From positions 248,001 to 312,000 of IMG/VR virus record IMGVR_UViG_3300040801_001224: DNA of 64,000 nucleotides; one strand, given 5' to 3'. Positions 12,148-42,925 of the stretch are shown here, one piece after another; position 1 is the stretch's first letter; each line of letters starts with the position of its first letter. The notes below the pieces were generated by a model that saw only the letters and a program-made list of their open reading frames with translations, searched no databases and was not told the DNA's origin. A program made the translations under genes and the position numbers.

Positions 12148-12372
12148 ATGTCTACAGAAAAGTAGTAAAAATCCAGAGACCTAGGTCTGTAAGCTAGGGA
12201 GCATTAGAAGAGACATCTTCTATTCGGGGAGGGCAACAAGACTCTTGTGTCGGACACCAATCCTGCTATATTTTACATATTATTCTAAAATAGTGATAAA
12301 TAGGAATAAGCGTAAGATAAGGTGCTACCAACACCTTACCCTACTAAACATAACAATAATTGGAGTATTATT

Positions 12373-13242
12373 ATGCCTACTACTATTTATCAAGACTGGA
12401 ATCCACGTCACTATTATATTATAAGAAATAAAACCTCTGGAAAACTATACATTGGCCAAACTATAAGAATAATTTTAGAAGAATATTTAGGATCTGGAGA
12501 ATATTGGAAATCACACTGTGAACGCAATGGTGGCTATAATAAAGAAAATATTGAGGTATTATACAACAAATACTACGAAGATAAAAATAAAGCACAGCAG
12601 TTTTTAGACGAAGTATATGAGAAAGAAGGAAGATATTGGGATAAAGGAAACACTAAATGGGCAAATTTGATGCCTGAAACTACATCTGCATATGACCCAT
12701 TGGTTATGTCTGAGATACAAAAAAGAAGAATTGAAAATGGAACACATCATTTATTGAAAGAAAATCGCAAGGTTCTACATACTTCGACTGAATTAACTCC
12801 CGAGCAAGCAAGAAGTATGGCGTCAAAAAGAATTGAAGGCGGAACACATAACATTGGATGCGGGAAAGTATATTGTGTGACCAGAACTGGAGAAATTGTC
12901 AATATTGATGTAGATGTATACGAAGCACAGCAAGGAGAAATGTGCGATTGGGATTATGTTAGGCCTAACTCTAATGAGGGTAGAAACCGTACTGGAAAGG
13001 TAAAACCAGAAATATCTGATGAAACAAAGAACAAATTAAGGCACGTTCAAATGAAACAAATTGAGTCAGGTAACCACAACTTAAAAGGTAGTGTCACTTG
13101 CCGCAATAAAAAGGGAAAAGTAGTCCAGGTTCCAAAAGAAATATATTATGCCCAAGTTGGGACATATTGTGATAGAGAATATGTCACAATAGGATCTATT
13201 GAGGGTAGAAGAAGAGCAGGAAAACCTCCGCGCTATCAATAA
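12373..13242 (+). mobile_element. free-standing GIY-YIG (Seg-like) homing endonuclease gene
   Basis: YYIIRNKTSGKLYIGQT, YLGSG, WANL; repeated C-terminal G.HN/HL modules. Confidence 0.85.
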
Positions 13243-13343
13243 AAACTCGTGTAGTGATCCTGAAGAGTTGAATGCTGCCTGGTTAGTCAGCCAGGAATAA
13301 GGAGTAGTTGTAAAACTAAATTTAACTTTTTTATTTTATAAAG

Positions 13344-13536
13344 AGTTTATTTAAATATACTAAGTAGCAAACATCGTTTATATTAAAACCTTGGGTAAGA
13401 TGTTGGACATTAGTTTAATTGGCAGAACGCTTGCTGGCTGGATAAGACCTTAGGAGTCATGACCTATCGTTGCTCCGATAGCTGGCTTGAAGTGGGGTTC
13501 GAGTCCCCGTGCCCACTTAGTATATTTAAATAAACT
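13344..13536 (+). ncRNA. tRNA-like RNA with central insertion, enclosed by a 22-bp perfect inverted repeat
   Basis: 13344-13365 is the exact reverse complement of 13515-13536; D arm GTTTAATTGGCAGAAC and T arm GGGGTTCGAGTCCCC inside. Confidence 0.65.
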
Positions 13537-13542
13537 TTTAAT

Positions 13543-13621
13543 GGCGGCTATAGCTTAACAGGTTTAAAGCCCCTCTCTGTGAAAGAGGAAGATGTCGGGT
13601 CGGATCCGACTAGTCGCCCCA
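13543..13621 (+). tRNA. tRNA-His(GTG)
   Basis: G-1, C73, CCTCT-CTGTGAA-AGAGG, CCA; atypical T loop GTCGGAT. Confidence 0.9.
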
Positions 13622-13627
13622 AACAAC

Positions 13628-13703
13628 GGTAATGTAGCTCAGTGGTAGTAGCACATGATTCATACTCATGCGGTCGTTGGTTCAAATCCAACCATTACCA
13701 CCA
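13628..13703 (+). tRNA. tRNA with CAT anticodon (probably elongator Met)
   Basis: cloverleaf, CATGA-TTCATAC-TCATG, CCA. Confidence 0.9.
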
Positions 13704-13710
13704 AATTTAT

Positions 13711-13783
13711 ACTCTGTTGGAGAAACCGGTTATCTCGTCAGACTTTCAATCTGGAATTACGGGTTCGAGCCCCGTACAGAGTG
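13711..13783 (+). tRNA. tRNA-Glu(TTC), no encoded CCA
   Basis: ACTCTGT/ACAGAGT, TCAGA-CTTTCAA-TCTGG. Confidence 0.9.
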
Positions 13784-13794
13784 CAAACTATTAC

Positions 13795-13823
13795 TTGACA
13801 TTACCACTTTTTAATAGTATAAT
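13795..13823 (+). promoter_or_regulatory. sigma70-type early promoter with CCAC box
   Basis: TTGACA-17-TATAAT. Confidence 0.85.
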
Positions 13824-13842
13824 GTCAATATTAAGAAGTAAG

Positions 13843-14003
13843 TGTGTTTACAGGGTGTGAAGGCATGGGAAACGACATGCCGACAAATTCTCGAATGTCA
13901 GAGATAGGCACTGGTGTTTGAGAATGGATAAAGCCTCACCGCCTAAGAGCCATGAGCTCTATTGAGGTTGCTGGTTAGATTCCAGCCGCACCCTGTAAAC
14001 ACA
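13843..14003 (+). ncRNA. structured RNA with 15-bp closing stem and T-arm-like hairpin
   Basis: 13843-13857 pairs perfectly with 13989-14003; GGCATG/CATGCC; GCTGG-TTAGATT-CCAGC; own promoter. Confidence 0.7.
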
Positions 14004-14216
14004 TTAAGATAATGGTCTAAGCTGACCGTCGCGACAACCGATATGCTAAGTAACTGATTTAGCGGTTAGTGAAACACATAGAGGACAATGCTTCAAGGAG
14101 GATTTCCACTGCCTTGTAAAACAAAACGGTGGAGCCAAATTCAATGGGACCTCCCTGGTGATATATTACGCAAACGTCATAGTTTGTTAGCGCAACCATA
14201 GGCCCGCCAAATTTAA

Positions 14217-14293
14217 GGGGATGTAGCATAGTTGGTTAATGCGCCGGCCTGTCACGTCGGAGACCGCGAGTTCAAGTCTCGTCATTCCCGCCA
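14217..14293 (+). tRNA. tRNA-Asp(GTC)
   Basis: cloverleaf, CCGGC-CTGTCAC-GTCGG, CCA. Confidence 0.95.
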
Positions 14294-14300
14294 ATTTTAA

Positions 14301-14391
14301 GGAAGGTACCGCTAAGTGGCTGGCAACCTGGTTTGAACCCAGGGGCGTTGATTGAGAGTCGGCGGGGGTTCGATTCCTCTACCTTCCTCCA
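14301..14391 (+). tRNA. tRNA-Ser(TGA)
   Basis: CCTGG-TTTGAAC-CCAGG, long variable arm, CCA. Confidence 0.92.
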
Positions 14392-14559
14392 AACCGGTAA
14401 CCGTTAGTATCTAGACTATGTGAGGCACCACAGACGTGGCGAACGGTTAGCATAGTTGACCAATAGGTGGTGGAGAATGCCACTGGGACGGTTTAATGCT
14501 GTCGCAAGACCGCTATAGGGGAGCAACGATACTGAGAGTGCGAACCCCACCAATTTTAT

Positions 14560-14650
14560 AGTAGGTTGCCAGAGTTGGTCTATTGGCGCGGACTGCTAAT
14601 CCGTTGGGTTCTAACGAGCCACGTGGGTTCGAATCCCACACCTACTGCCA
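14560..14650 (+). tRNA. tRNA-Ser(GCT)
   Basis: GCGGA-CTGCTAA-TCCGT, long variable arm, GCCA. Confidence 0.92.
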
Positions 14651-14656
14651 AATAAT

Positions 14657-14743
14657 GTATGTGCGTCAGAGTTGGAGAGCTGAAGCGGACTGTAAACCCG
14701 TTGCCAAAGTGCTGAATAGGTTCGATTCCTATCACATACACCA
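14657..14743 (+). tRNA. tRNA-Tyr(GTA)
   Basis: GCGGA-CTGTAAA-CCCGT, long variable arm, CCA. Confidence 0.92.
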
Positions 14744-14820
14744 AATTTCGTTTACGTAGGCTTTCGATATAAGCCCGGGGGGAAGCATGAAACCCCCTCA
14801 AGAACATGCTTATCTTTAAT

Positions 14821-14898
14821 GCGTCTATAGTGTTCAACGGCTCAGCACGTTAGGCTTCCACCCTGAAAGTTTCGGTTCGAATCCGAATAGACGCTCCA
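14821..14898 (+). tRNA. tRNA-Gly(TCC)
   Basis: GCGTCTA/TAGACGC, CTTCCAC loop, TCCA. Confidence 0.92.
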
Positions 14899-14983
14899 AT
14901 TTTTCTTGCCGATGTGGTGTACAACACATCATTAAATAATGCCATACACGTAAAGTCACTGTGGGGGCAAGAACATTTTATAT

Positions 14984-15058
14984 GGGTCACGGTCTGGGTA
15001 ACCGGGTTGGTCTCCAAAACCGACTGTCTGCCAATTTCGATTATTGGGTGGCCCGCCA
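14984..15058 (+). tRNA. tRNA-Trp(CCA), degenerate D and T arms
   Basis: GGGTCAC/GTGGCCC, TTGGT-CTCCAAA-ACCGA, GCCA. Confidence 0.7.
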
Positions 15059-15143
15059 ATTTTAATGAGAGGAAACAAAGGATGAAACCTGGTAAGATCT
15101 AGGCGGACAACATACAGTCCGCCATATAAATTAAATATATGAC

Positions 15144-15220
15144 GGACTCATAGCTCAATTTGGTAGAGCCCCGGTCTTTTAAATCGGTTGTTCCAGGTTC
15201 GAGGCCTGGTGGGTCCACCA
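15144..15220 (+). tRNA. tRNA-Lys(TTT)
   Basis: CCGGT-CTTTTAA-ATCGG, CCA. Confidence 0.93.
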
Positions 15221-15336
15221 ATTTTTATCTTCGCAGACCTGTAACCATATTCTGCCTCCGCCGTCGACGAAAACAGGATGGGCTGTCGGCGCAAGGTTTG
15301 TAGTTATCCTGACCCAAAACTACATCCATTTTCTGT

Positions 15337-15419
15337 CGCAGGCGAGTGGAACGGATATATAAACCATACCGGGCTCATAACCCGTGTGATACTGGGTTCG
15401 ACTCCCAGGTCTGCTACCA
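15337..15419 (+). tRNA. initiator tRNA-fMet(CAT)
   Basis: unpaired C1, GGG/CCC anticodon stem, enlarged D loop. Confidence 0.85.
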
Positions 15420-15421
15420 AT

Positions 15422-15497
15422 GGAGAGTTAGCTTTGTAGGTCAAAGCGTCCGGTTGAAGCCCGGAAGAACCTGGTTCGAATCCTGGACTCTCCACCA
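15422..15497 (+). tRNA. tRNA-Phe(GAA)
   Basis: TCCGG-TTGAAGC-CCGGA, CCA. Confidence 0.9.
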
Positions 15498-15516
15498 AAT
15501 TTAGATAAATAGTGTT

Positions 15517-16512: not shown

Positions 16513-16587
16513 GCCGAGTGGTCTGGATGTTTAGGTGCTGGTCTGCAAAACCATGTTAACAGGGTTAGATTCCCTGACTCGGCTCCA
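16513..16587 (+). tRNA. tRNA-Cys(GCA)
   Basis: GCCGAGT/ACTCGGC, CTGCAAA loop, TCCA. Confidence 0.88.
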
Positions 16588-16665: not shown

Positions 16666-16672
16666 ATTTTTT

Positions 16673-16830
16673 TAACTTGTGCCGGAACTGGTATACGGGG
16701 GTGTGGTCTCAGTCAATATGAATAGGGTTGTGAATAAAGAATAGCAACTCTTGTACCCAGGGCGAAAACCACCAGGCGGTAAGCAGTACAACGCAAAACG
16801 CCATTGTAGGTTCAAATCCTACCAAGTTAA
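16673..16830 (+). tRNA. class II (Leu/Ser-type) tRNA gene with about 53-nt insertion in the anticodon loop
   Basis: TAACTTG/CAAGTTA acceptor, Leu-type D arm, GTAGG-TTCAAAT-CCTAC, GTGGT/ACCAC stem enclosing 60 nt. Confidence 0.65.
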
Positions 16831-17798: not shown

Positions 17799-17827
17799 TT
17801 GACAAACCCATTATACTCTAGTATAAT
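17799..17827 (+). promoter_or_regulatory. sigma70-type promoter of the giant ncRNA
   Basis: TTGACA-17-TATAAT. Confidence 0.85.
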
Positions 17828-17833
17828 ACAATT

Positions 17834-18697
17834 CAAAGTTAAGCAATGTCGCATATCGACGATAAGGCACTGAAAGGTGTCGAAGGATGGGAATCCAACA
17901 GCCCATCACCAGCAATGGTAGAGGTATGCAAGCCGAGACTCCAATAAGATATCAGTCATGCTGGTATTAGGAGACAAAGGCTCTCTTAGGGAAGTACCCC
18001 CAGGCCAACGGTGAGGGGCGAAAGTAACAGGTGAAGCTGACTACCTAGGGTTCAAAGAGCTAAGTTGACAGAGTCAAAGGGTAGTGTTACTTGTACAAGA
18101 CTTAGCGGTCGAGTGCTGTGACGCAGTCTTATAGGTAGTGTCCACAACCAGGGCATAATATCTAGAAAGACAACTGAAAAGTAACCTTAGCGGGTGAAAC
18201 AGTATTCGGTGTAGCGTATTCTGTACTCCAAAAGAGTATGGACCGTTTTAGAGGCGCACATCGAGGTTGGTTTAAGTTAGCTCAATTGGTTAGAGCAACG
18301 GCATTTTGGAGCCGTGGGTTCTTGGTTCAATTCCAAGACTTACATACAAAAACGCAAAGACGCCTCTACGTAGTAGTAACGATTAAATGACTTAATTGTC
18401 CGTACACTCCGGTGAATACGGAATAGGTTGAACTCGCAAGGTGACGCCTAGTTTGTTTGAAGTCGCACATTGGATTTAGCGATCCTTAACTGCTCGCAAG
18501 GCAGATGGAACACTGACAGCAGAAACGACTACTATAAAAGTGTAAACGCCAGCACTATAAAATGGGCAGTCATGCTTGATACCGAAAGACGAGACCACGG
18601 TCTGTCCAAGGGGAGTAGGGCTTAACTAGCAAGGTCGCACTTGTTAGGTACGAGTTCCGAATGATCAAGTGTAATACGTCCTAACTCTCAGACGTAT
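17834..18697 (+). ncRNA. probable GOLLD giant ncRNA with embedded tRNA-like domain
   Basis: about 860 nt with no ORF over 60 aa, GC-richer, many hairpins, two CTCGCAAGG motifs, 3' GTGTAAT..CTAACTCTCAG hairpin, tRNA-cluster context; family assignment from memory. Confidence 0.7.
18271..18344 (+). tRNA. tRNA-like domain (Gln TTG-like, 8-nt loop, no CCA) inside the giant RNA
   Basis: GCTCAATTGGTTAGAGC D arm, ACGGC/GCCGT, CTTGG-TTCAATT-CCAAG. Confidence 0.7.
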
Positions 18698-21402: not shown

Positions 21403-21431
21403 TTGACAATCCCACTATCCTGTAGTATAAT
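21403..21431 (+). promoter_or_regulatory. sigma70-type early promoter with CCAC box
   Basis: TTGACA-17-TATAAT. Confidence 0.85.
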
Positions 21432-21437
21432 ACCTAT

Positions 21438-21773
21438 ATGAAAGTTACAGGAACGCAAACTAAAGAAGTTAAGATTGAAATTAGTGATTATCAGATTGAA
21501 AAGATCATTAGAAAATCCAACTTACCCATTAAAGAATACGCAAATATATTAGAATCTAAATATATTAGAGAAGTATTCAAGGAAGATGGTTACAGCGAAT
21601 CCAACTACCCAGTATATGATTATGAACGTAAAAAATGGGAAATATGGGTTGAAGCATATCATGGTAGTGATTGGACTAATCCTGTTCGTGATGCAACAGA
21701 GAATGAAATTGCTGTAATGAATGCTATTCAAGAAATTAGAAATGTGTTCCTCGCAGAAGAGTTAATTAAATAA
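21438..21773 (+). CDS. hypothetical protein
   Basis: ORF track, after promoter. Confidence 0.7.
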   Translation: MKVTGTQTKEVKIEISDYQIEKIIRKSNLPIKEYANILESKYIREVFKEDGYSESNYPVYDYERKKWEIWVEAYHGSDWTNPVRDATENEIAVMNAIQEIRNVFLAEELIK

Positions 21774-23599: not shown

Positions 23600-23932
23600 A
23601 TGAAATAGACTAAACCAACATTACGTTTGTGGAAATGGGGAGAAGATAGATTTTCCCATCTTGGATACAAAATATTCACAGTGTTTTACTGTAAGTACTT
23701 TGACTTTTATATATTTAAATATCAACCAGGTGCCTATATACCAAAACACAAAGATCCAGGAAAATGGCATTACAGATTAAATTTTATATTTGGTGGTGAT
23801 GGCAAGTTTATATGTAAAGGTGCGTTAATAAACACCAAGTACATAACACTGTTTAGAGCGGACAAGTATTACCATAAGACAACACCAACTTCCACGACAC
23901 GTTATGTTGTAAGTTTTGGTCTAAAGTTTTGA
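23600..23932 (+). CDS. 2OG-Fe(II) oxygenase-like protein with in-frame TAG at codon 3 from the best start (or TTG start at 23627)
   Basis: IPKHKDPG (HxD), HYRLNF, distal H and RYVVSFG; AAGGA-9nt-ATG AAA TAG in frame. Confidence 0.65.
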
Positions 23933-23999
23933 GCCATTGAGGCCAGCCTAAGGATTCTAAACCCAGAAGGCGCCGGTTCAAGTCCGGCATGGCTCACCA
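23931..23999 (+). tRNA. aberrant 69-nt tRNA-like gene, possible CTA anticodon
   Basis: GAGCCAT/ATGGCTC-ACCA and GCCGG-TTCAAGT-CCGGC perfect; tiny D arm; weak anticodon stem around TTCTAAA. Confidence 0.5.
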
Positions 24000-40757: not shown

Positions 40758-42788
40758 ATGCGCCTAAACGACATCCTATTAGAACTAAACTTTAACAAGA
40801 GTGATGTTCGCCAACTAGCACTTAACAGTAAAGTTGATTGCGGCTTTGAAGCTGAGTTAGTCTGGCCTATAGACGATGGCGGCATGGATTCATCAACTAT
40901 TCAAGATATGGACTGGGATGATCTGCAAAACGCCATATATAACCAGGAAGGGCAACGGGGTGTTGATTCAGTCAGACAAGTGTATGACCAATGGGTCATG
41001 GACTATGCGTATGATGAAGTATACTCTAGTCACCTTGAATCTATAATAGAGAATAATACCGAAAGCTGGCACTGGACCGAGTTCGTAGAAGAAGACGAGG
41101 ACAAGTTCAGGGACTGGTGCGAAGATAACGATAAAGAGTTTGACGTACAGGATCAGGCAACTATCGAAGAGTGGATAGAAGATGATGTCGTAGCAAATGA
41201 TGAATGGCGTGAATGGATTCGTGAAAAGCTAGACTATGATGGCACGTTATCGGATGCCATATTTGAAATCGTAAATGAAGAATACGATATAGACTACTGG
41301 CTATCAAGAAATAATGTATATGATATTTTAAGCGATGCTGAAGTTTATGTGGACGAGTTTGATGAAGATGTTTATATAGAACAAATAGCAGAAGAAATAG
41401 GCCCTATACTAGAACGCTATAGTCAGTTTGACAGTTACGTGTATGGTGGTTACCACAGCAACACGGGCTCAACAGCTATGTGGCGTATTGAAACTGATAG
41501 CTCAATTGAATCGAACACGTATAGTGACGGTGAATTTGTCGGTGTAGAAATAATTAGTCCTGTATTTGAAACGCCTGGCGACATGTTGGAGGAAATGGAA
41601 ATGCTATTCAACAATCTGCCAGCCACAGTTGGAACAAATTCAAGCACAGGTTTACACGTTACAATGAGTATGCCACGTAAGACAGACTCTAAACCAAATA
41701 AACTAAAGATGGCCTTACTGTTGGGTGAGAAGTTTATCCTAGATATATTCAGCCGTCGTGGCAATTCATACACACTACCACATGGTGACAAAATCTTACA
41801 AAAACTACTACAAATGGATCCAGCTGAAATTAATGACTTGCGCTTTGAAAAGCTAGAAAAATTAGTTACAAGCCAAATGGAACAAGCCAAGTATAGCACT
41901 ATTAACTTCAAGAGTGAAGAGAACGAATATGGCAATCAGCTTATTGAATTCCGTGTTGCGGGCGGAACAGACTACGAAGTATACATGGATAAAATTGAAA
42001 AGACTGTGGTGCGTTATGCGACTGTTATGCGAGCTGGCTATTCGGACTTTTACAAAGAAGATTACGCAAAGGCACTCACACGTTTTGTACACAAGATATC
42101 AAAAGTTACCAAACAAGCTACTGGTGACGATCCTATCCTAAAGGCATTCGTTGCCATGGGCAGTCCAAATAATGCTAAATCTATTGACCAACAGTATAAA
42201 GATGCTAAGGCAAACGAAATGGAAGGCTTCATGACTGAAGCTGAAGAAAGGCTGTATAACATGGTACGTGTGGCCCTGGAAAATGTTGATGTGCAGAAGT
42301 TTAAAAAGGACGTTAACCCTAGTGTGTCACGTGGTGTGAAAATGGCGTTTAAGCGTTTCAACGGCCATCCAAAGAGATTTTTAGAAAGGCACCCCAGAGC
42401 TCTAAAAGAATACTATGCCCTACAACGTGTATTCAGACAGCCAGATCAGATAGAAGCTTTCGTTGATAAGCCCTGGGAAAAAGTATTCATACTAACTAAC
42501 AATGCCCTGGAAAACTTAAAGCAGGGCAAGCCTGTTGGTTATGATCAGATCCATGTGGGACACAAGTCACTCATGTATTCCTGGGATGATGCCGTTAAGT
42601 TTAGACAGCACAATTCAGAAGACAAGGTAGAAAAATCTAAAAAAGAACTCACAGATAAATTCAATGTAGACTATGATTGGGATTTAACCGGTGAACCGAA
42701 CAAATGGGTAGTCATTGACGGTGGCCGTATAGACTCGAAGTTCATGCAGGCACTATTCATGATGAAAATATTAGTACTGAGTACTTGA
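40758..42788 (+). CDS. putative amidoligase (COOH-NH2 ligase fold) with acidic insertion
   Basis: GFEAE, WRIETDSSI, EIISP, STGLHVTMS, KYSTINF, IEFRVAGG. Confidence 0.85.
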   Translation: MRLNDILLELNFNKSDVRQLALNSKVDCGFEAELVWPIDDGGMDSSTIQDMDWDDLQNAIYNQEGQRGVDSVRQVYDQWVMDYAYDEVYSSHLESIIENNTESWHWTEFVEEDEDKFRDWCEDNDKEFDVQDQATIEEWIEDDVVANDEWREWIREKLDYDGTLSDAIFEIVNEEYDIDYWLSRNNVYDILSDAEVYVDEFDEDVYIEQIAEEIGPILERYSQFDSYVYGGYHSNTGSTAMWRIETDSSIESNTYSDGEFVGVEIISPVFETPGDMLEEMEMLFNNLPATVGTNSSTGLHVTMSMPRKTDSKPNKLKMALLLGEKFILDIFSRRGNSYTLPHGDKILQKLLQMDPAEINDLRFEKLEKLVTSQMEQAKYSTINFKSEENEYGNQLIEFRVAGGTDYEVYMDKIEKTVVRYATVMRAGYSDFYKEDYAKALTRFVHKISKVTKQATGDDPILKAFVAMGSPNNAKSIDQQYKDAKANEMEGFMTEAEERLYNMVRVALENVDVQKFKKDVNPSVSRGVKMAFKRFNGHPKRFLERHPRALKEYYALQRVFRQPDQIEAFVDKPWEKVFILTNNALENLKQGKPVGYDQIHVGHKSLMYSWDDAVKFRQHNSEDKVEKSKKELTDKFNVDYDWDLTGEPNKWVVIDGGRIDSKFMQALFMMKILVLST

Positions 42789-42813
42789 CAAACCACTTCT
42801 ACTATAGTATAAT
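42785..42813 (+). promoter_or_regulatory. sigma70-type early promoter with CCAC box
   Basis: TTGACA-17-TATAAT. Confidence 0.85.
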
Positions 42814-42838
42814 ACTTCTATTAAATAAATAAACGTAT

Positions 42839-42925
42839 GCCGTCATGGAGAAATTGGTAGACTCAGGAGACTTAAAATCTCCCGCTGTTAAAGGCGTCCT
42901 GGTTCGAGTCCAGGTGGCGGCACCA
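42839..42925 (+). tRNA. tRNA-Leu(TAA), second copy
   Basis: GGAGA-CTTAAAA-TCTCC, long variable arm, ACCA. Confidence 0.95.

What the first reader, a model, noticed from the sequence alone, without database searches (positions are those of the whole stretch)
13795..14003. Promoter-driven 160-nt RNA with extended acceptor-like stem and T-arm
It has its own sigma70 promoter, a 15-bp perfect closing helix, a 6-bp D-like stem and a T-arm directly before the 3' strand, that is a tRNA elbow with about 80 nt of foreign core. It resembles Y-RNA or tRNA-Sec-like geometry but has no anticodon arm.
Basis: partly seen in the sequence, partly recalled or inferred. Interest (0 to 1): 0.65.

Follow-up and report, generated by a model that had tools for sequence, protein, structure and literature searches.

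The report
Promoter cassette carrying tRNA-shaped phage RNA
A giant T4-like phage from a microbial mat carries, inside its tRNA gene array, a 226-base cassette made of a strong early promoter and a very stably folded 165-base tRNA-shaped RNA that cannot decode; it resembles the still unexplained "species 1" RNA of phage T4, and one close relative seems to lack it.

Summary
A 12/12 sigma-70 promoter (13795-13823) is followed by a 165-nt RNA (13841-14005). The RNA has a 19-bp closing helix, a 6-bp D-like hairpin, a 15-bp hairpin, a branched hairpin, and a T-arm-like hairpin that abuts the 3' strand. Folding z is -8.1.

It matches no Rfam family even at E<=10, and ARAGORN does not call it a tRNA or tmRNA at default thresholds.

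The window belongs to a complete 328-kb jumbo phage with a T4 gp23-type capsid, sampled from a microbial mat. The element sits in an array of at least 26 tRNA genes. Its promoter is one of 77 perfect copies of a phage early-promoter family.

One contig from a roughly 95%-identical relative joins 13782 to 14009. On that single low-depth contig, promoter plus RNA form a 226-bp presence/absence cassette.

No homologue was found in five complete relatives, IMG/VR, JGI metagenomes or phage GenBank records.

The layout matches T4 rnaC (species 1 RNA), but a covariance model of rnaC does not detect it. Y-RNA, tRNA-Sec and spliceable-tRNA readings fail their defining tests.

Best reading: an early-expressed, tRNA-derived, non-decoding small RNA on a shuffling promoter cassette. 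Its function is unknown; a tRNA mimic is my guess. Expression is untested.

The parts
13783..14008 (+). 226-bp presence/absence cassette: 12 nt, promoter, 17-nt stretch between -10 and the helix, RNA, 3 nt
   Evidence: A 183-nt salt-marsh contig (about 95% identical, depth 2) joins 13782 to 14009 with ACCA in between. In that relative tRNA-Glu ends in ...AGAGU-ACCA and runs straight into 14009.
13795..13823 (+). Sigma-70 early promoter (-35 at 13795-13800, -10 at 13818-13823); predicted start A13830
   Evidence: 12/12 match. One of 77 perfect TTGACA-N16-18-TATAAT sites, 75 on the + strand. It carries the family's spacer motif ACCACTTT and the TAT start motif 6-8 nt after the -10.
13841..13859 (+). 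5' strand of the 19-bp closing (extended acceptor-like) helix
   Evidence: Mean pair probability 0.98.
13862..13881 (+). D-arm-like hairpin: 6 bp, loop GGAAACGA, preceded by AA
   Evidence: Pair probability 1.0.
13887..13925 (+). 15-bp hairpin with the 9-nt loop AGAUAGGCA, in the anticodon-arm position
   Evidence: Mean pair probability 0.95. It has no U33 and no 7-nt loop.
13932..13969 (+). Branched hairpin in the variable-arm position (7-bp outer stem, 5-bp inner stem)
   Evidence: Mean pair probabilities 0.91 and 0.97.
13970..13986 (+). T-arm-like hairpin GCUGG-UUAGAUU-CCAGC
   Evidence: Pair probability 0.99. G53-C61, U54, U55, R57 and A58 are kept; position 56 is A. The phage's tRNA-Cys (16513-16587) has the same loop.
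13987..14005 (+). 3' strand of the closing helix; no CCA and no terminator follow
13711..13784 (+). tRNA-Glu(UUC) directly upstream; its encoded CCA end is missing here but present in the relative without the cassette
14217..14293 (+). tRNA-Asp(GUC), the first canonical tRNA downstream in the same transcription unit (next perfect promoter at 17799)

Best explanation
The element is a gene for a tRNA-derived, non-decoding small RNA of about 165 nt. It is carried with its own early promoter on a 226-bp cassette inside the tRNA array of a T4-superfamily jumbo phage.

Proposed mechanism:
1. Host sigma-70 RNA polymerase starts at about A13830, early in infection. This is inferred from promoter-family membership.
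2. Transcription runs through the RNA into tRNA-Asp, tRNA-Ser and further tRNA genes, because no terminator follows. This is read from the sequence.
3. The RNA folds into a tRNA-shaped body. Its T-arm stacks on a 19-bp helix formed by the two ends. The fold is computed, not probed.
4. Processing then releases it from the polycistronic transcript. The long helix is a plausible RNase III substrate. This step is inferred.
5. The product has no anticodon loop and no CCA end, so it cannot act in decoding.

By analogy with T4 species 1 RNA it would accumulate as a stable tRNA look-alike. My preferred function, with low confidence, is a mimic that occupies tRNA-binding host factors such as processing or modifying enzymes or tRNA-targeting defence nucleases.

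The cassette probably arrived by the promoter-mediated shuffling described for PeSL elements of T4-type phages.
For: Structure:
- z = -8.1, and the centroid structure equals the MFE structure.
- All helices are highly probable.
- A 19-bp helix next to a T-arm is far beyond the control-strand background.

Promoter:
- 12/12 match, and a member of a 77-copy, strand-biased family with a shared spacer and start motif.
- The other family members sit a median of 36 nt before an ORF.
- Among the 13 copies whose downstream 200 nt I folded (the 11 with no ORF found within 600 nt, plus two others), this is the only one followed by strongly structured RNA (z -7).

tRNA kinship:
- tRNA arm order, with the two ends forming the helix beside the T-arm.
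- The T-loop is identical to that of the phage's own tRNA-Cys and close to the tRNA-Cys of relative G005.
- ARAGORN at 90% threshold forces it into a tRNA frame.

Context:
- The capsid protein is T4 gp23-like (270 bits).
- There are at least 26 tRNA genes on the same strand.
- A GIY-YIG ORF lies just upstream, as segB does in the T4 tRNA cluster.

Cassette: a close relative lacks exactly promoter plus RNA.

Analogue: T4 rnaC has the same layout, with 19 of 46 pairs covarying in five genera.

Sister element: 13341-13539 in the same array has a 25-bp closing helix next to a canonical T-arm. All nine substitutions seen in marine-sediment relatives are neutral for its structure, including one A-U to G-C compensatory pair.
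Against: - There is no expression data. No RNA run holds the sequence.
- There is no homologue anywhere, so the element itself has no covariation support. BLAST and covariance-model searches of five complete relatives, plus 12 (model) to 22 (BLAST) partial records, found nothing. Phage GenBank records gave nothing. Exact and loop-anchored patterns gave nothing in IMG/VR or JGI metagenomes.
- The absence in a relative rests on one 183-nt contig of depth 2.
- A56 in the T-loop removes the canonical G19-C56 elbow pair.
- A very young insertion could keep perfect helices without being under selection.
- The function is pure inference.
Confidence: 0.55

Rival explanations
1. It is a cis-acting 5' leader of the downstream tRNA operon. 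On this reading the inserted promoter is what matters. The structured RNA would only protect the 5' end or provide an RNase III processing stem, like the stems that flank rRNA, and would have no function in trans.
For: No terminator separates it from tRNA-Asp and the following tRNA genes. The 19-bp helix formed by the two ends resembles a processing stem. The cassette adds a strong promoter in front of at least 9 tRNA genes.
Against: A simple hairpin would do for protection or processing. A five-helix, tRNA-ordered body with a T-loop is more than is needed. Another promoter of the family (42785) drives tRNA-Leu directly, with no such leader.
Confidence: 0.17
2. It is a decaying or chimeric pseudo-tRNA: a former tRNA gene (for example of tRNA-Cys type) disrupted by insertions and recombination in a hyperplastic array, and now functionless.
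For: The array and those of its relatives hold several odd tRNA-like genes with insertions or mismatched acceptor strands. There is no homologue in any relative. A close relative does without it.
Against: It has 56 predicted pairs, 15 consecutive perfect pairs and z = -8.1, which is not what decay produces. It also has a dedicated consensus promoter.
Confidence: 0.13
3. It is a true tRNA gene with an intron or introns, like the 'enigmatic introns' of Lak megaphage tRNAs. After splicing it would decode, perhaps supplying the tRNA-Val that I could not find in the array.
For: PMC6784885 reports introns in phage tRNAs. At 90% threshold it calls this element tRNA-Leu(AAG) with a 62-nt intron. No tRNA-Val was detected.
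Against: It falls below ARAGORN's default threshold even with introns allowed. The forced model needs a 3-bp D-stem and a mismatched anticodon stem. The helix continues 11-12 bp beyond any acceptor stem, and no CCA is encoded. There is no bulge-helix-bulge motif: the 15-bp hairpin is fully paired. The genome has no splicing endonuclease, no clear RtcB or Rnl2 ligase and no CCA-adding enzyme. No UAC, GAC or CAC anticodon sits in any 7-nt loop.
Confidence: 0.08
4. It is a DNA-level mobile element (MITE-like) with 15-19-bp terminal inverted repeats, and the RNA fold is incidental.
For: The ends are an inverted repeat. The region is an indel between close relatives.
Against: The indel runs from 13783 to 14008 and includes the promoter, so it does not coincide with the inverted repeats at 13841 and 14005. 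No target-site duplication flanks either boundary. Four further internal helices raise the fold far above shuffles. There is only one copy in the genome.
Confidence: 0.04

Closest known systems
Phage T4 species 1 RNA (rnaC), a small stable RNA of the T4 tRNA cluster
   Same: Both are encoded among the tRNA genes of a phage with a T4-type capsid. Both are 139-165 nt. Both have the layout: closing stem from the two ends, long hairpin, second hairpin, then a T-arm directly before the 3' strand. Neither has an anticodon loop or an encoded CCA. A GIY-YIG endonuclease gene lies nearby in both. To my knowledge the function of rnaC is also unknown.
   Different: There is no detectable homology: the rnaC covariance model R2 finds nothing here, and the model of this RNA finds nothing in T4. 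rnaC has a short, interrupted closing stem (3+2 bp) against 19 bp here. rnaC has a canonical UUCGAAU T-loop against UUAGAUU here. rnaC has no D-like hairpin. In the rnaC model the 5' strand of one stem also forms the base of the long hairpin. rnaC lies at the distal end of the T4 tRNA cluster with no promoter annotated directly before it; I did not scan for one.
PeSL cassettes (promoter-early stem-loop) of T4-type phages (PMC2839356, PMC4122927)
   Same: Both involve near-perfect TTGACA-N17-TATAAT early promoters repeated through the genome and associated with insertions and deletions between close relatives.
   Different: PeSLs carry a stem-loop upstream of the promoter and a Shine-Dalgarno sequence plus ORF downstream. 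Here the cargo is a structured RNA, and only tRNA-Glu lies upstream.
Bacterial Y RNAs of the YrlA type (PMC4201824)
   Same: Both are non-coding RNAs with a T-arm and a D-like arm that mimic tRNA. Some YrlA RNAs are phage-encoded.
   Different: In YrlA the acceptor-like stem is a closed hairpin between the T and D arms, and the two ends form the Ro-binding stem. YrlA carries a GNCGAAN0-1G motif and lies within 4 kb of a Ro60 gene. None of these holds here.
Intron-bearing tRNAs of Lak megaphages (PMC6784885)
   Same: Both are oversized tRNA-like genes in the tRNA arrays of huge phages, and neither is explained by known bacterial splicing.
   Different: The Lak genes are called as tRNAs once the intron is allowed. 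This element is not.

Membership tests
Canonical tRNA (Rfam RF00005 / ARAGORN) | Cloverleaf that scores against the tRNA covariance model | tested here: not met
   There is no match even at E<=10 in a 441-nt search. ARAGORN gives none at default, with or without introns.
Canonical tRNA (Rfam RF00005 / ARAGORN) | 5-bp anticodon stem with a 7-nt loop and U33 | tested here: not met
   The arm in that position is 15 bp with the 9-nt loop AGAUAGGCA.
Canonical tRNA (Rfam RF00005 / ARAGORN) | T-arm: 5 bp, G53-C61, loop UUCRANN | tested here: inconclusive
   The hairpin is GCUGG-UUAGAUU-CCAGC. Every conserved position fits except C56, which is A. The phage's own tRNA-Cys has the same loop.
Canonical tRNA (Rfam RF00005 / ARAGORN) | 7-bp acceptor stem with a single-stranded discriminator and CCA end | tested here: not met
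   The helix runs on for 19 bp and no CCA is encoded. Most tRNAs of this array do encode CCA.
tRNA-Sec (RF01852) | Match to the model; UCA anticodon | tested here: not met
   No hit at E<=10. No UCA lies in a loop. Only the 6-bp D-stem is reminiscent.
tmRNA | tRNA-like domain plus a tag reading frame | tested here: not met
   ARAGORN and Rfam found none.
Y RNA / YrlA | Ro60 (TROVE) gene within about 4 kb | tested here: not met
   PF05731 is absent from the whole 328-kb genome, and the control genomes were positive.
Y RNA / YrlA | Arm order T, acceptor-like hairpin, D, with the two ends in the Ro-binding stem; GNCGAAN0-1G near the 5' end | tested here: not met
   Here the order is D...T closed by the two ends, and the motif is absent. 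The definition was read.
T4 rnaC (species 1 RNA) | Sequence and structure homology to the rnaC alignment | tested here: not met
   Model R2 (5 genera, 46 pairs) gave no hit on the element. The best hits in 316 kb are T-arms of tRNAs (E 0.035 and worse).
T4 rnaC (species 1 RNA) | Located in the tRNA cluster of a T4-type phage; closing stem, long hairpin, second hairpin, T-arm abutting the 3' strand | tested here: met
T4 rnaC (species 1 RNA) | Accumulates as a stable processed RNA | not testable with these tools
   No RNA run holds the sequence.
PeSL-type mobile promoter cassette | Repeated near-consensus early promoter | tested here: met
   There are 77 perfect copies, 75 on the + strand, with a shared spacer and start motif.
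PeSL-type mobile promoter cassette | Sits at an indel between close relatives | tested here: met
   One contig skips 13783-14008. The support is a single contig of low depth.
PeSL-type mobile promoter cassette | Stem-loop just upstream of the promoter, and a Shine-Dalgarno sequence plus ORF downstream | tested here: not met
   Only tRNA-Glu lies upstream, and no ORF follows.
Intron-bearing tRNA | A valid tRNA after removal of one insertion | tested here: inconclusive
   It is called only at 90% of ARAGORN's threshold, as tRNA-Leu(AAG) with a 62-nt intron and a poor D-stem and anticodon stem. The genome has no splicing enzymes.
MITE-like element | Terminal inverted repeats that bound the mobile unit, target-site duplication, several copies | tested here: not met
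   The indel borders are 13783 and 14008, not 13841 and 14005. There is no duplication and only a single copy.

The most novel reading that the evidence does not exclude
A phage-encoded tRNA decoy: an early, highly expressed RNA with the acceptor/T-arm face of a tRNA but no decodable anticodon. It would soak up a host tRNA-directed defence nuclease or another tRNA-binding factor, and it would spread between phages on a portable promoter cassette. If true, it would also suggest a function for T4 species 1 RNA, which to my knowledge has been unexplained since the 1970s.
Probability: 0.12. Interest if true: 0.8.

Novelty: new variant of a known kind. Interest (0 to 1): 0.45.

Why it matters
Phage tRNA arrays are now seen as weapons against host defences that cut tRNAs. 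The non-tRNA small RNAs within such arrays (T4 species 1 and 2) have never, to my knowledge, been explained.

This finding gives an independent example that is unrelated in sequence but alike in architecture, in a distant jumbo relative. It has its own early promoter and appears as a presence/absence cassette. That suggests tRNA-shaped, non-decoding RNAs are a recurring, exchangeable accessory of T4-type phages.

It also offers a compact, clonable object (226 bp) for testing what such RNAs bind.

The same array holds several other oversized tRNA-like genes, so this phage clade is a good place to study how phages remodel the tRNA scaffold.

Tried and rejected
Searches for homologues, all negative:
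- BLAST of the element and of 6 kb around it against 50,697 phage records.
- An exact 26-mer and a loop-anchored gapped pattern in IMG/VR, and the gapped pattern in JGI metagenomes.
- The predicted empty-site junction in IMG/VR, and a 24-mer from the downstream spacer in JGI metagenomes.
- BLAST against 27 related viral records, and covariance model R1 against 16 of them plus the phage's own genome.
- R1 against the T4 tRNA region.

Relatives sought through neighbouring proteins:
- The 487-aa and 625-aa neighbours have no close kin in IMG/VR.
- The word search found distant tail-fibre-like kin in unrelated contexts with no tRNA genes.
- The capsid protein did find 80 relatives at 78-88% identity. 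Their non-coding DNA is too diverged to compare: the conserved neighbouring element A is not found in them either.

Paralogy: the four long tRNA-like elements of the array share no meaningful sequence.

rnaC membership was rejected.

Y RNA, tmRNA, tRNA-Sec and every other Rfam family were rejected.

Small ORF: the only internal frame is 18 codons with no usable ribosome-binding site and lies buried in helices. I rejected it by inspection.

Expression could not be assessed, because the only holders are DNA contigs of one microbial-mat sample.

The large protein-representative search, structure prediction and complex prediction were not used, because no protein claim depends on them.

Full report
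WHAT IS THERE

A perfect sigma-70 promoter, TTGACA-17 nt-TATAAT, occupies 13795-13823 (12/12). From 13841 to 14005 the + strand folds into a five-helix structure, listed here in order:
- A 19-bp closing helix, 13841-13859 with 13987-14005, of which 15 pairs are consecutive Watson-Crick pairs.
- Two unpaired A residues.
- A 6-bp hairpin with the loop GGAAACGA (13862-13881).
- A 15-bp hairpin with a 9-nt loop (13887-13925).
- A branched hairpin (13932-13969).
- With no spacer, a 5-bp hairpin with the 7-nt loop UUAGAUU (13970-13986), which directly abuts the 3' strand of the closing helix.

The MFE is -75.2 kcal/mol. Dinucleotide shuffles give -43.6 +/- 3.9 (z = -8.1, 0 of 200 as good), and the centroid equals the MFE. 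Every helix has a mean pair probability of at least 0.91.

I scanned the whole genome for a T-arm followed at once by a strand that pairs 40-260 nt upstream. On the + strand it recovered 19 annotated tRNAs, this element with a 19-bp helix, and a few more. On the minus strand it found only two hits, of 7-8 bp.

WHAT IT IS NOT

- Rfam 15 gives no match to any of 4227 families, even at E<=10 on a 441-nt search. At gathering thresholds the window yields only tRNAs.
- ARAGORN finds no tRNA or tmRNA here, with or without introns, at default thresholds. Lowered to 90%, it forces the element into 'tRNA-Leu(AAG) with a 62-nt intron', with a 3-bp D-stem and a mismatched anticodon stem.
- The arm in the anticodon position is 15 bp with a 9-nt loop and no U33.
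- The helix of the two ends continues 11-12 bp beyond any acceptor stem, and no CCA is encoded.
- The genome encodes no tRNA-splicing endonuclease, no CCA-adding enzyme, and only sub-threshold RtcB and RNA-ligase hits. A decoding tRNA is therefore unlikely.
- The Y-RNA idea fails on each defining point that I read in PMC4201824. No Ro60/TROVE gene lies anywhere in the genome. The arm order is D...T closed by the two ends, rather than T, acceptor-like hairpin, D. The GNCGAAN0-1G motif is absent.

CONTEXT

The window is positions 248001-312000 of a complete 328,096-bp viral record with direct terminal repeats. Its major capsid protein is of the T4 gp23 type (PF07068, 270 bits). Run metadata place it in a microbial mat, with relatives in marine sediment and salt marsh.

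The element lies between tRNA-Glu (13711-13784) and tRNA-Asp (14217-14293). It is part of an array of at least 26 tRNA genes, all on the + strand. A GIY-YIG ORF (12322-13242) sits just upstream, as segB does in the T4 tRNA cluster.

THE PROMOTER IS REAL, BUT NOT PRIVATE

- The genome holds 77 perfect TTGACA-N16-18-TATAAT sites, 75 of them on the + strand.
- The 71 copies with a 17-nt spacer share an A-rich upstream tract, a spacer motif (aaACCACTTT), and a TAT motif 6-8 nt after the -10.
- This promoter has all of these features. The predicted start is A13830, 11 nt before the helix.
- Promoters of the family stand a median of 36 nt before an ORF.
- I folded the 200 nt downstream of 13 copies: the 11 with no ORF found within 600 nt, plus two others. 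This is the only one followed by strongly structured RNA (z about -7).
- No terminator follows the RNA, and the next perfect promoter is at 17799. The transcript must therefore continue into tRNA-Asp, Ser, Ser, Gly, Lys and Phe, and the RNA has to be cut out.

A PRESENCE/ABSENCE CASSETTE

I laid Logan contigs of four runs on 13300-15500.
- The source sample covers the whole stretch at 100% identity.
- A 183-nt contig from a salt-marsh run (about 95% identical, depth 2) joins 13782 directly to 14009, with ACCA in between.
- In that relative tRNA-Glu ends in its CCA and runs into the spacer before tRNA-Asp, which is the usual pattern of this array.
- Here 226 bp take that place: 12 nt, promoter, leader, RNA and 3 nt. 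The encoded CCA of tRNA-Glu is gone.
- Marine-sediment relatives hold both flanks (13306-13623, and from 14217 on) but have no depth over 13818-14187.

The unit of variation is promoter plus RNA. It is not the stretch bounded by the inverted repeat, and no target duplication is present. This argues against a MITE.

Near-perfect early promoters that recur through the genome and sit at indels are exactly what Krisch and colleagues described as PeSL cassettes in T4-type phages (PMC4122927). Here, however, the cargo is an RNA rather than an ORF. The caveat is that this rests on one short, low-depth contig. Pattern searches for the empty junction found nothing further.

NO HOMOLOGUES

The capsid protein finds 80 related IMG/VR records at 78-88% identity, five of them complete or nearly complete genomes of 347-385 kb with 36-49 tRNAs. 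Neither BLAST nor a covariance model of the element (R1) finds it in them. Exact and loop-anchored patterns find nothing in IMG/VR or JGI metagenomes. Phage GenBank records give nothing.

These relatives are too far away for non-coding comparison. The demonstrably conserved neighbouring element A is not found in them either. The element itself therefore has no covariation evidence, for or against.

SISTER ELEMENTS

The gaps of the array hold further oversized tRNA-like genes.
- 13341-13539 ('A') has a 25-bp closing helix next to a canonical T-arm. ARAGORN calls its core tRNA-Ile(GAU) with a 41-nt intron.
- 15232-15415 carries the hallmarks of an initiator tRNA (mismatched 1-72 pair, A73-CCA, a GGG/CCC anticodon stem with a CAU anticodon), but with about 130 extra nt.
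- 16672-16830 has a canonical T-arm and D-arm and about 80 extra nt.

For A, the marine-sediment contigs differ at nine positions. All nine are neutral for its structure: one A-U to G-C compensatory pair in the long helix, three changes to G-U, and five unpaired positions. The architecture 'long terminal helix plus T-arm' is thus under selection in at least one neighbour.

The arrays of the relatives also hold long T-arm-bearing elements, while the opposite strands have none. They include a 119-121-nt, CCA-ended family conserved in three genomes, with a compensatory change in its inner stem.

The unusual T-loop UUAGAUU is shared with the phage's own tRNA-Cys. The tRNA-Cys of relative G005 has UUAGAAU. 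This hints that the 3' part of the element derives from such a gene.

CLOSEST KNOWN THING

T4 rnaC (species 1 RNA, 139 nt) lies in the T4 tRNA cluster. I aligned it with its homologues from four other Tevenvirinae genera. The consensus structure has a closing stem formed by the two ends, a long hairpin, a second hairpin, and a canonical T-arm directly before the 3' strand. Of its 46 pairs, 19 covary. That is the layout of the present element.

It is not a member of that family. The rnaC model R2 gives no hit on it or anywhere in 316 kb of this clade's arrays beyond T-arms of tRNAs, and R1 finds nothing in T4.

It also differs in four ways: a 19-bp helix against a 3+2-bp one, the presence of a D-like hairpin, the A56 T-loop, and a promoter of its own. 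To my knowledge (not checked in a paper here; a search for 'species 1 RNA' found none) the function of rnaC is still unknown.

MECHANISM

- Shown by sequence or computation: the promoter-family membership, the fold, the tRNA arm order, the lack of terminator, anticodon loop and CCA, and the indel.
- Inferred: early transcription from A13830; release by processing, for which a 19-bp helix stacked on a 5-bp T-stem is a plausible RNase III substrate; and accumulation as a stable tRNA look-alike.
- Guessed: that it acts as a mimic for tRNA-binding host factors. Phage tRNAs are currently viewed as counter-measures to tRNA-cutting defences (for example PMC10264068, listed), so a decoy is conceivable. 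Nothing here tests it.

Rivals are a cis-acting leader or processing stem for the tRNA operon, a pseudo-tRNA, a spliceable tRNA, and a MITE. They are weighed in their own sections.

VERDICT

This is a real, strongly structured, promoter-linked, tRNA-derived RNA gene on a small cassette. I rate it a new variant of the poorly understood class exemplified by T4 species 1 RNA. It is of moderate interest, limited by the lack of homologues and of expression data.

Noticed in passing
whole genome; in the window at 1377, 7691, 8781, 9466, 11772, 11865, 13795, 17799, 21403, 29726, 34207, 35303, 38662, 42785, 44339, 48200, 52716, 55463, 57839, 60875: There are 77 perfect TTGACA-N16-18-TATAAT promoters, 75 of them on the + strand. 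They share an A-rich upstream tract, the spacer motif ACCACTTT and a TAT start motif. This is a PeSL-like early-promoter family far beyond chance.
   Followed up: partly
window 13341-13539: A second long tRNA-like element has a 25-bp closing helix next to a canonical T-arm (GGGG-UUCGAGU-CCCC). ARAGORN calls its core tRNA-Ile(GAU) with a 41-nt intron. Nine substitutions in marine-sediment relatives are all neutral for the structure, including the compensatory pair 13359/13521.
   Followed up: partly
window 15232-15415: An initiator-tRNA-like gene carries about 130 extra nt between the acceptor 5' strand and the anticodon arm. It has a C1xU72 mismatch, A73-CCA and a GGGCUCAUAACCC anticodon arm. 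A similar oddity exists in relative G003.
   Followed up: partly
window 16672-16830: A 159-nt tRNA-like element has an 8-bp acceptor-like helix, a canonical T-arm (GUAGG-UUCAAAU-CCUAC), a D-like arm and about 80 nt inserted. It has no CCA.
   Followed up: no
window 18270-18347 and 23930-23996: Two tRNAs have 8-nt anticodon loops (UUUG and UCUA by ARAGORN). They could be quadruplet-reading or suppressor-like tRNAs; the second would contain CUA.
   Followed up: no
window 14657-14740 and 14983-15057: tRNA-Tyr(GUA) and tRNA-Trp(CCA) are missed by ARAGORN at default threshold but found at lower threshold or by Rfam. Even with them I found no tRNA-Val in the array.
   Followed up: partly
window 42785-42925: A lone tRNA-Leu(UAA) lies 15 kb outside the array. 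It starts 25 nt after the -10 of a promoter of the same family. This is a second 'promoter plus RNA gene' unit.
   Followed up: no
window 21403-21773, and genome positions 2542, 4392 and 321535: Several promoters of the family have an ATG exactly at the predicted start, 7 nt after the -10. An example is ORF 21438-21773. This suggests leaderless mRNAs.
   Followed up: no
window 12322-13242: A 306-aa ORF with a weak GIY-YIG match (E 8e-4, below the cut-off) lies directly upstream of the tRNA array. This parallels the homing endonuclease segB inside the T4 tRNA cluster.
   Followed up: no
window 14009-14216: A 208-nt non-coding spacer ends in ...GGCCCGCCA just before tRNA-Asp. It is kept at about 95% identity in the salt-marsh relative, folds only weakly (z -1.7) and contains AAGGAGG with no ORF behind it.
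   Followed up: no
L110-L112 (G001), L113-L116 (G003), L117-L119 (G005); minus strand of those records: A conserved 119-121-nt, CCA-ended tRNA-like RNA has a canonical acceptor stem, D-arm and T-arm. An extended hairpin sits in the anticodon position, and its inner stem covaries (AUCCU/AGGAU against AUUCU/AGAAU) while its loop varies.
   Followed up: partly
window 16513-16587; G005 array: The tRNA-Cys(GCA) of this clade has A at T-loop position 56 (UUAGAUU or UUAGAAU). In G005 it also has a long variable arm, which is unusual for tRNA-Cys.
   Followed up: no
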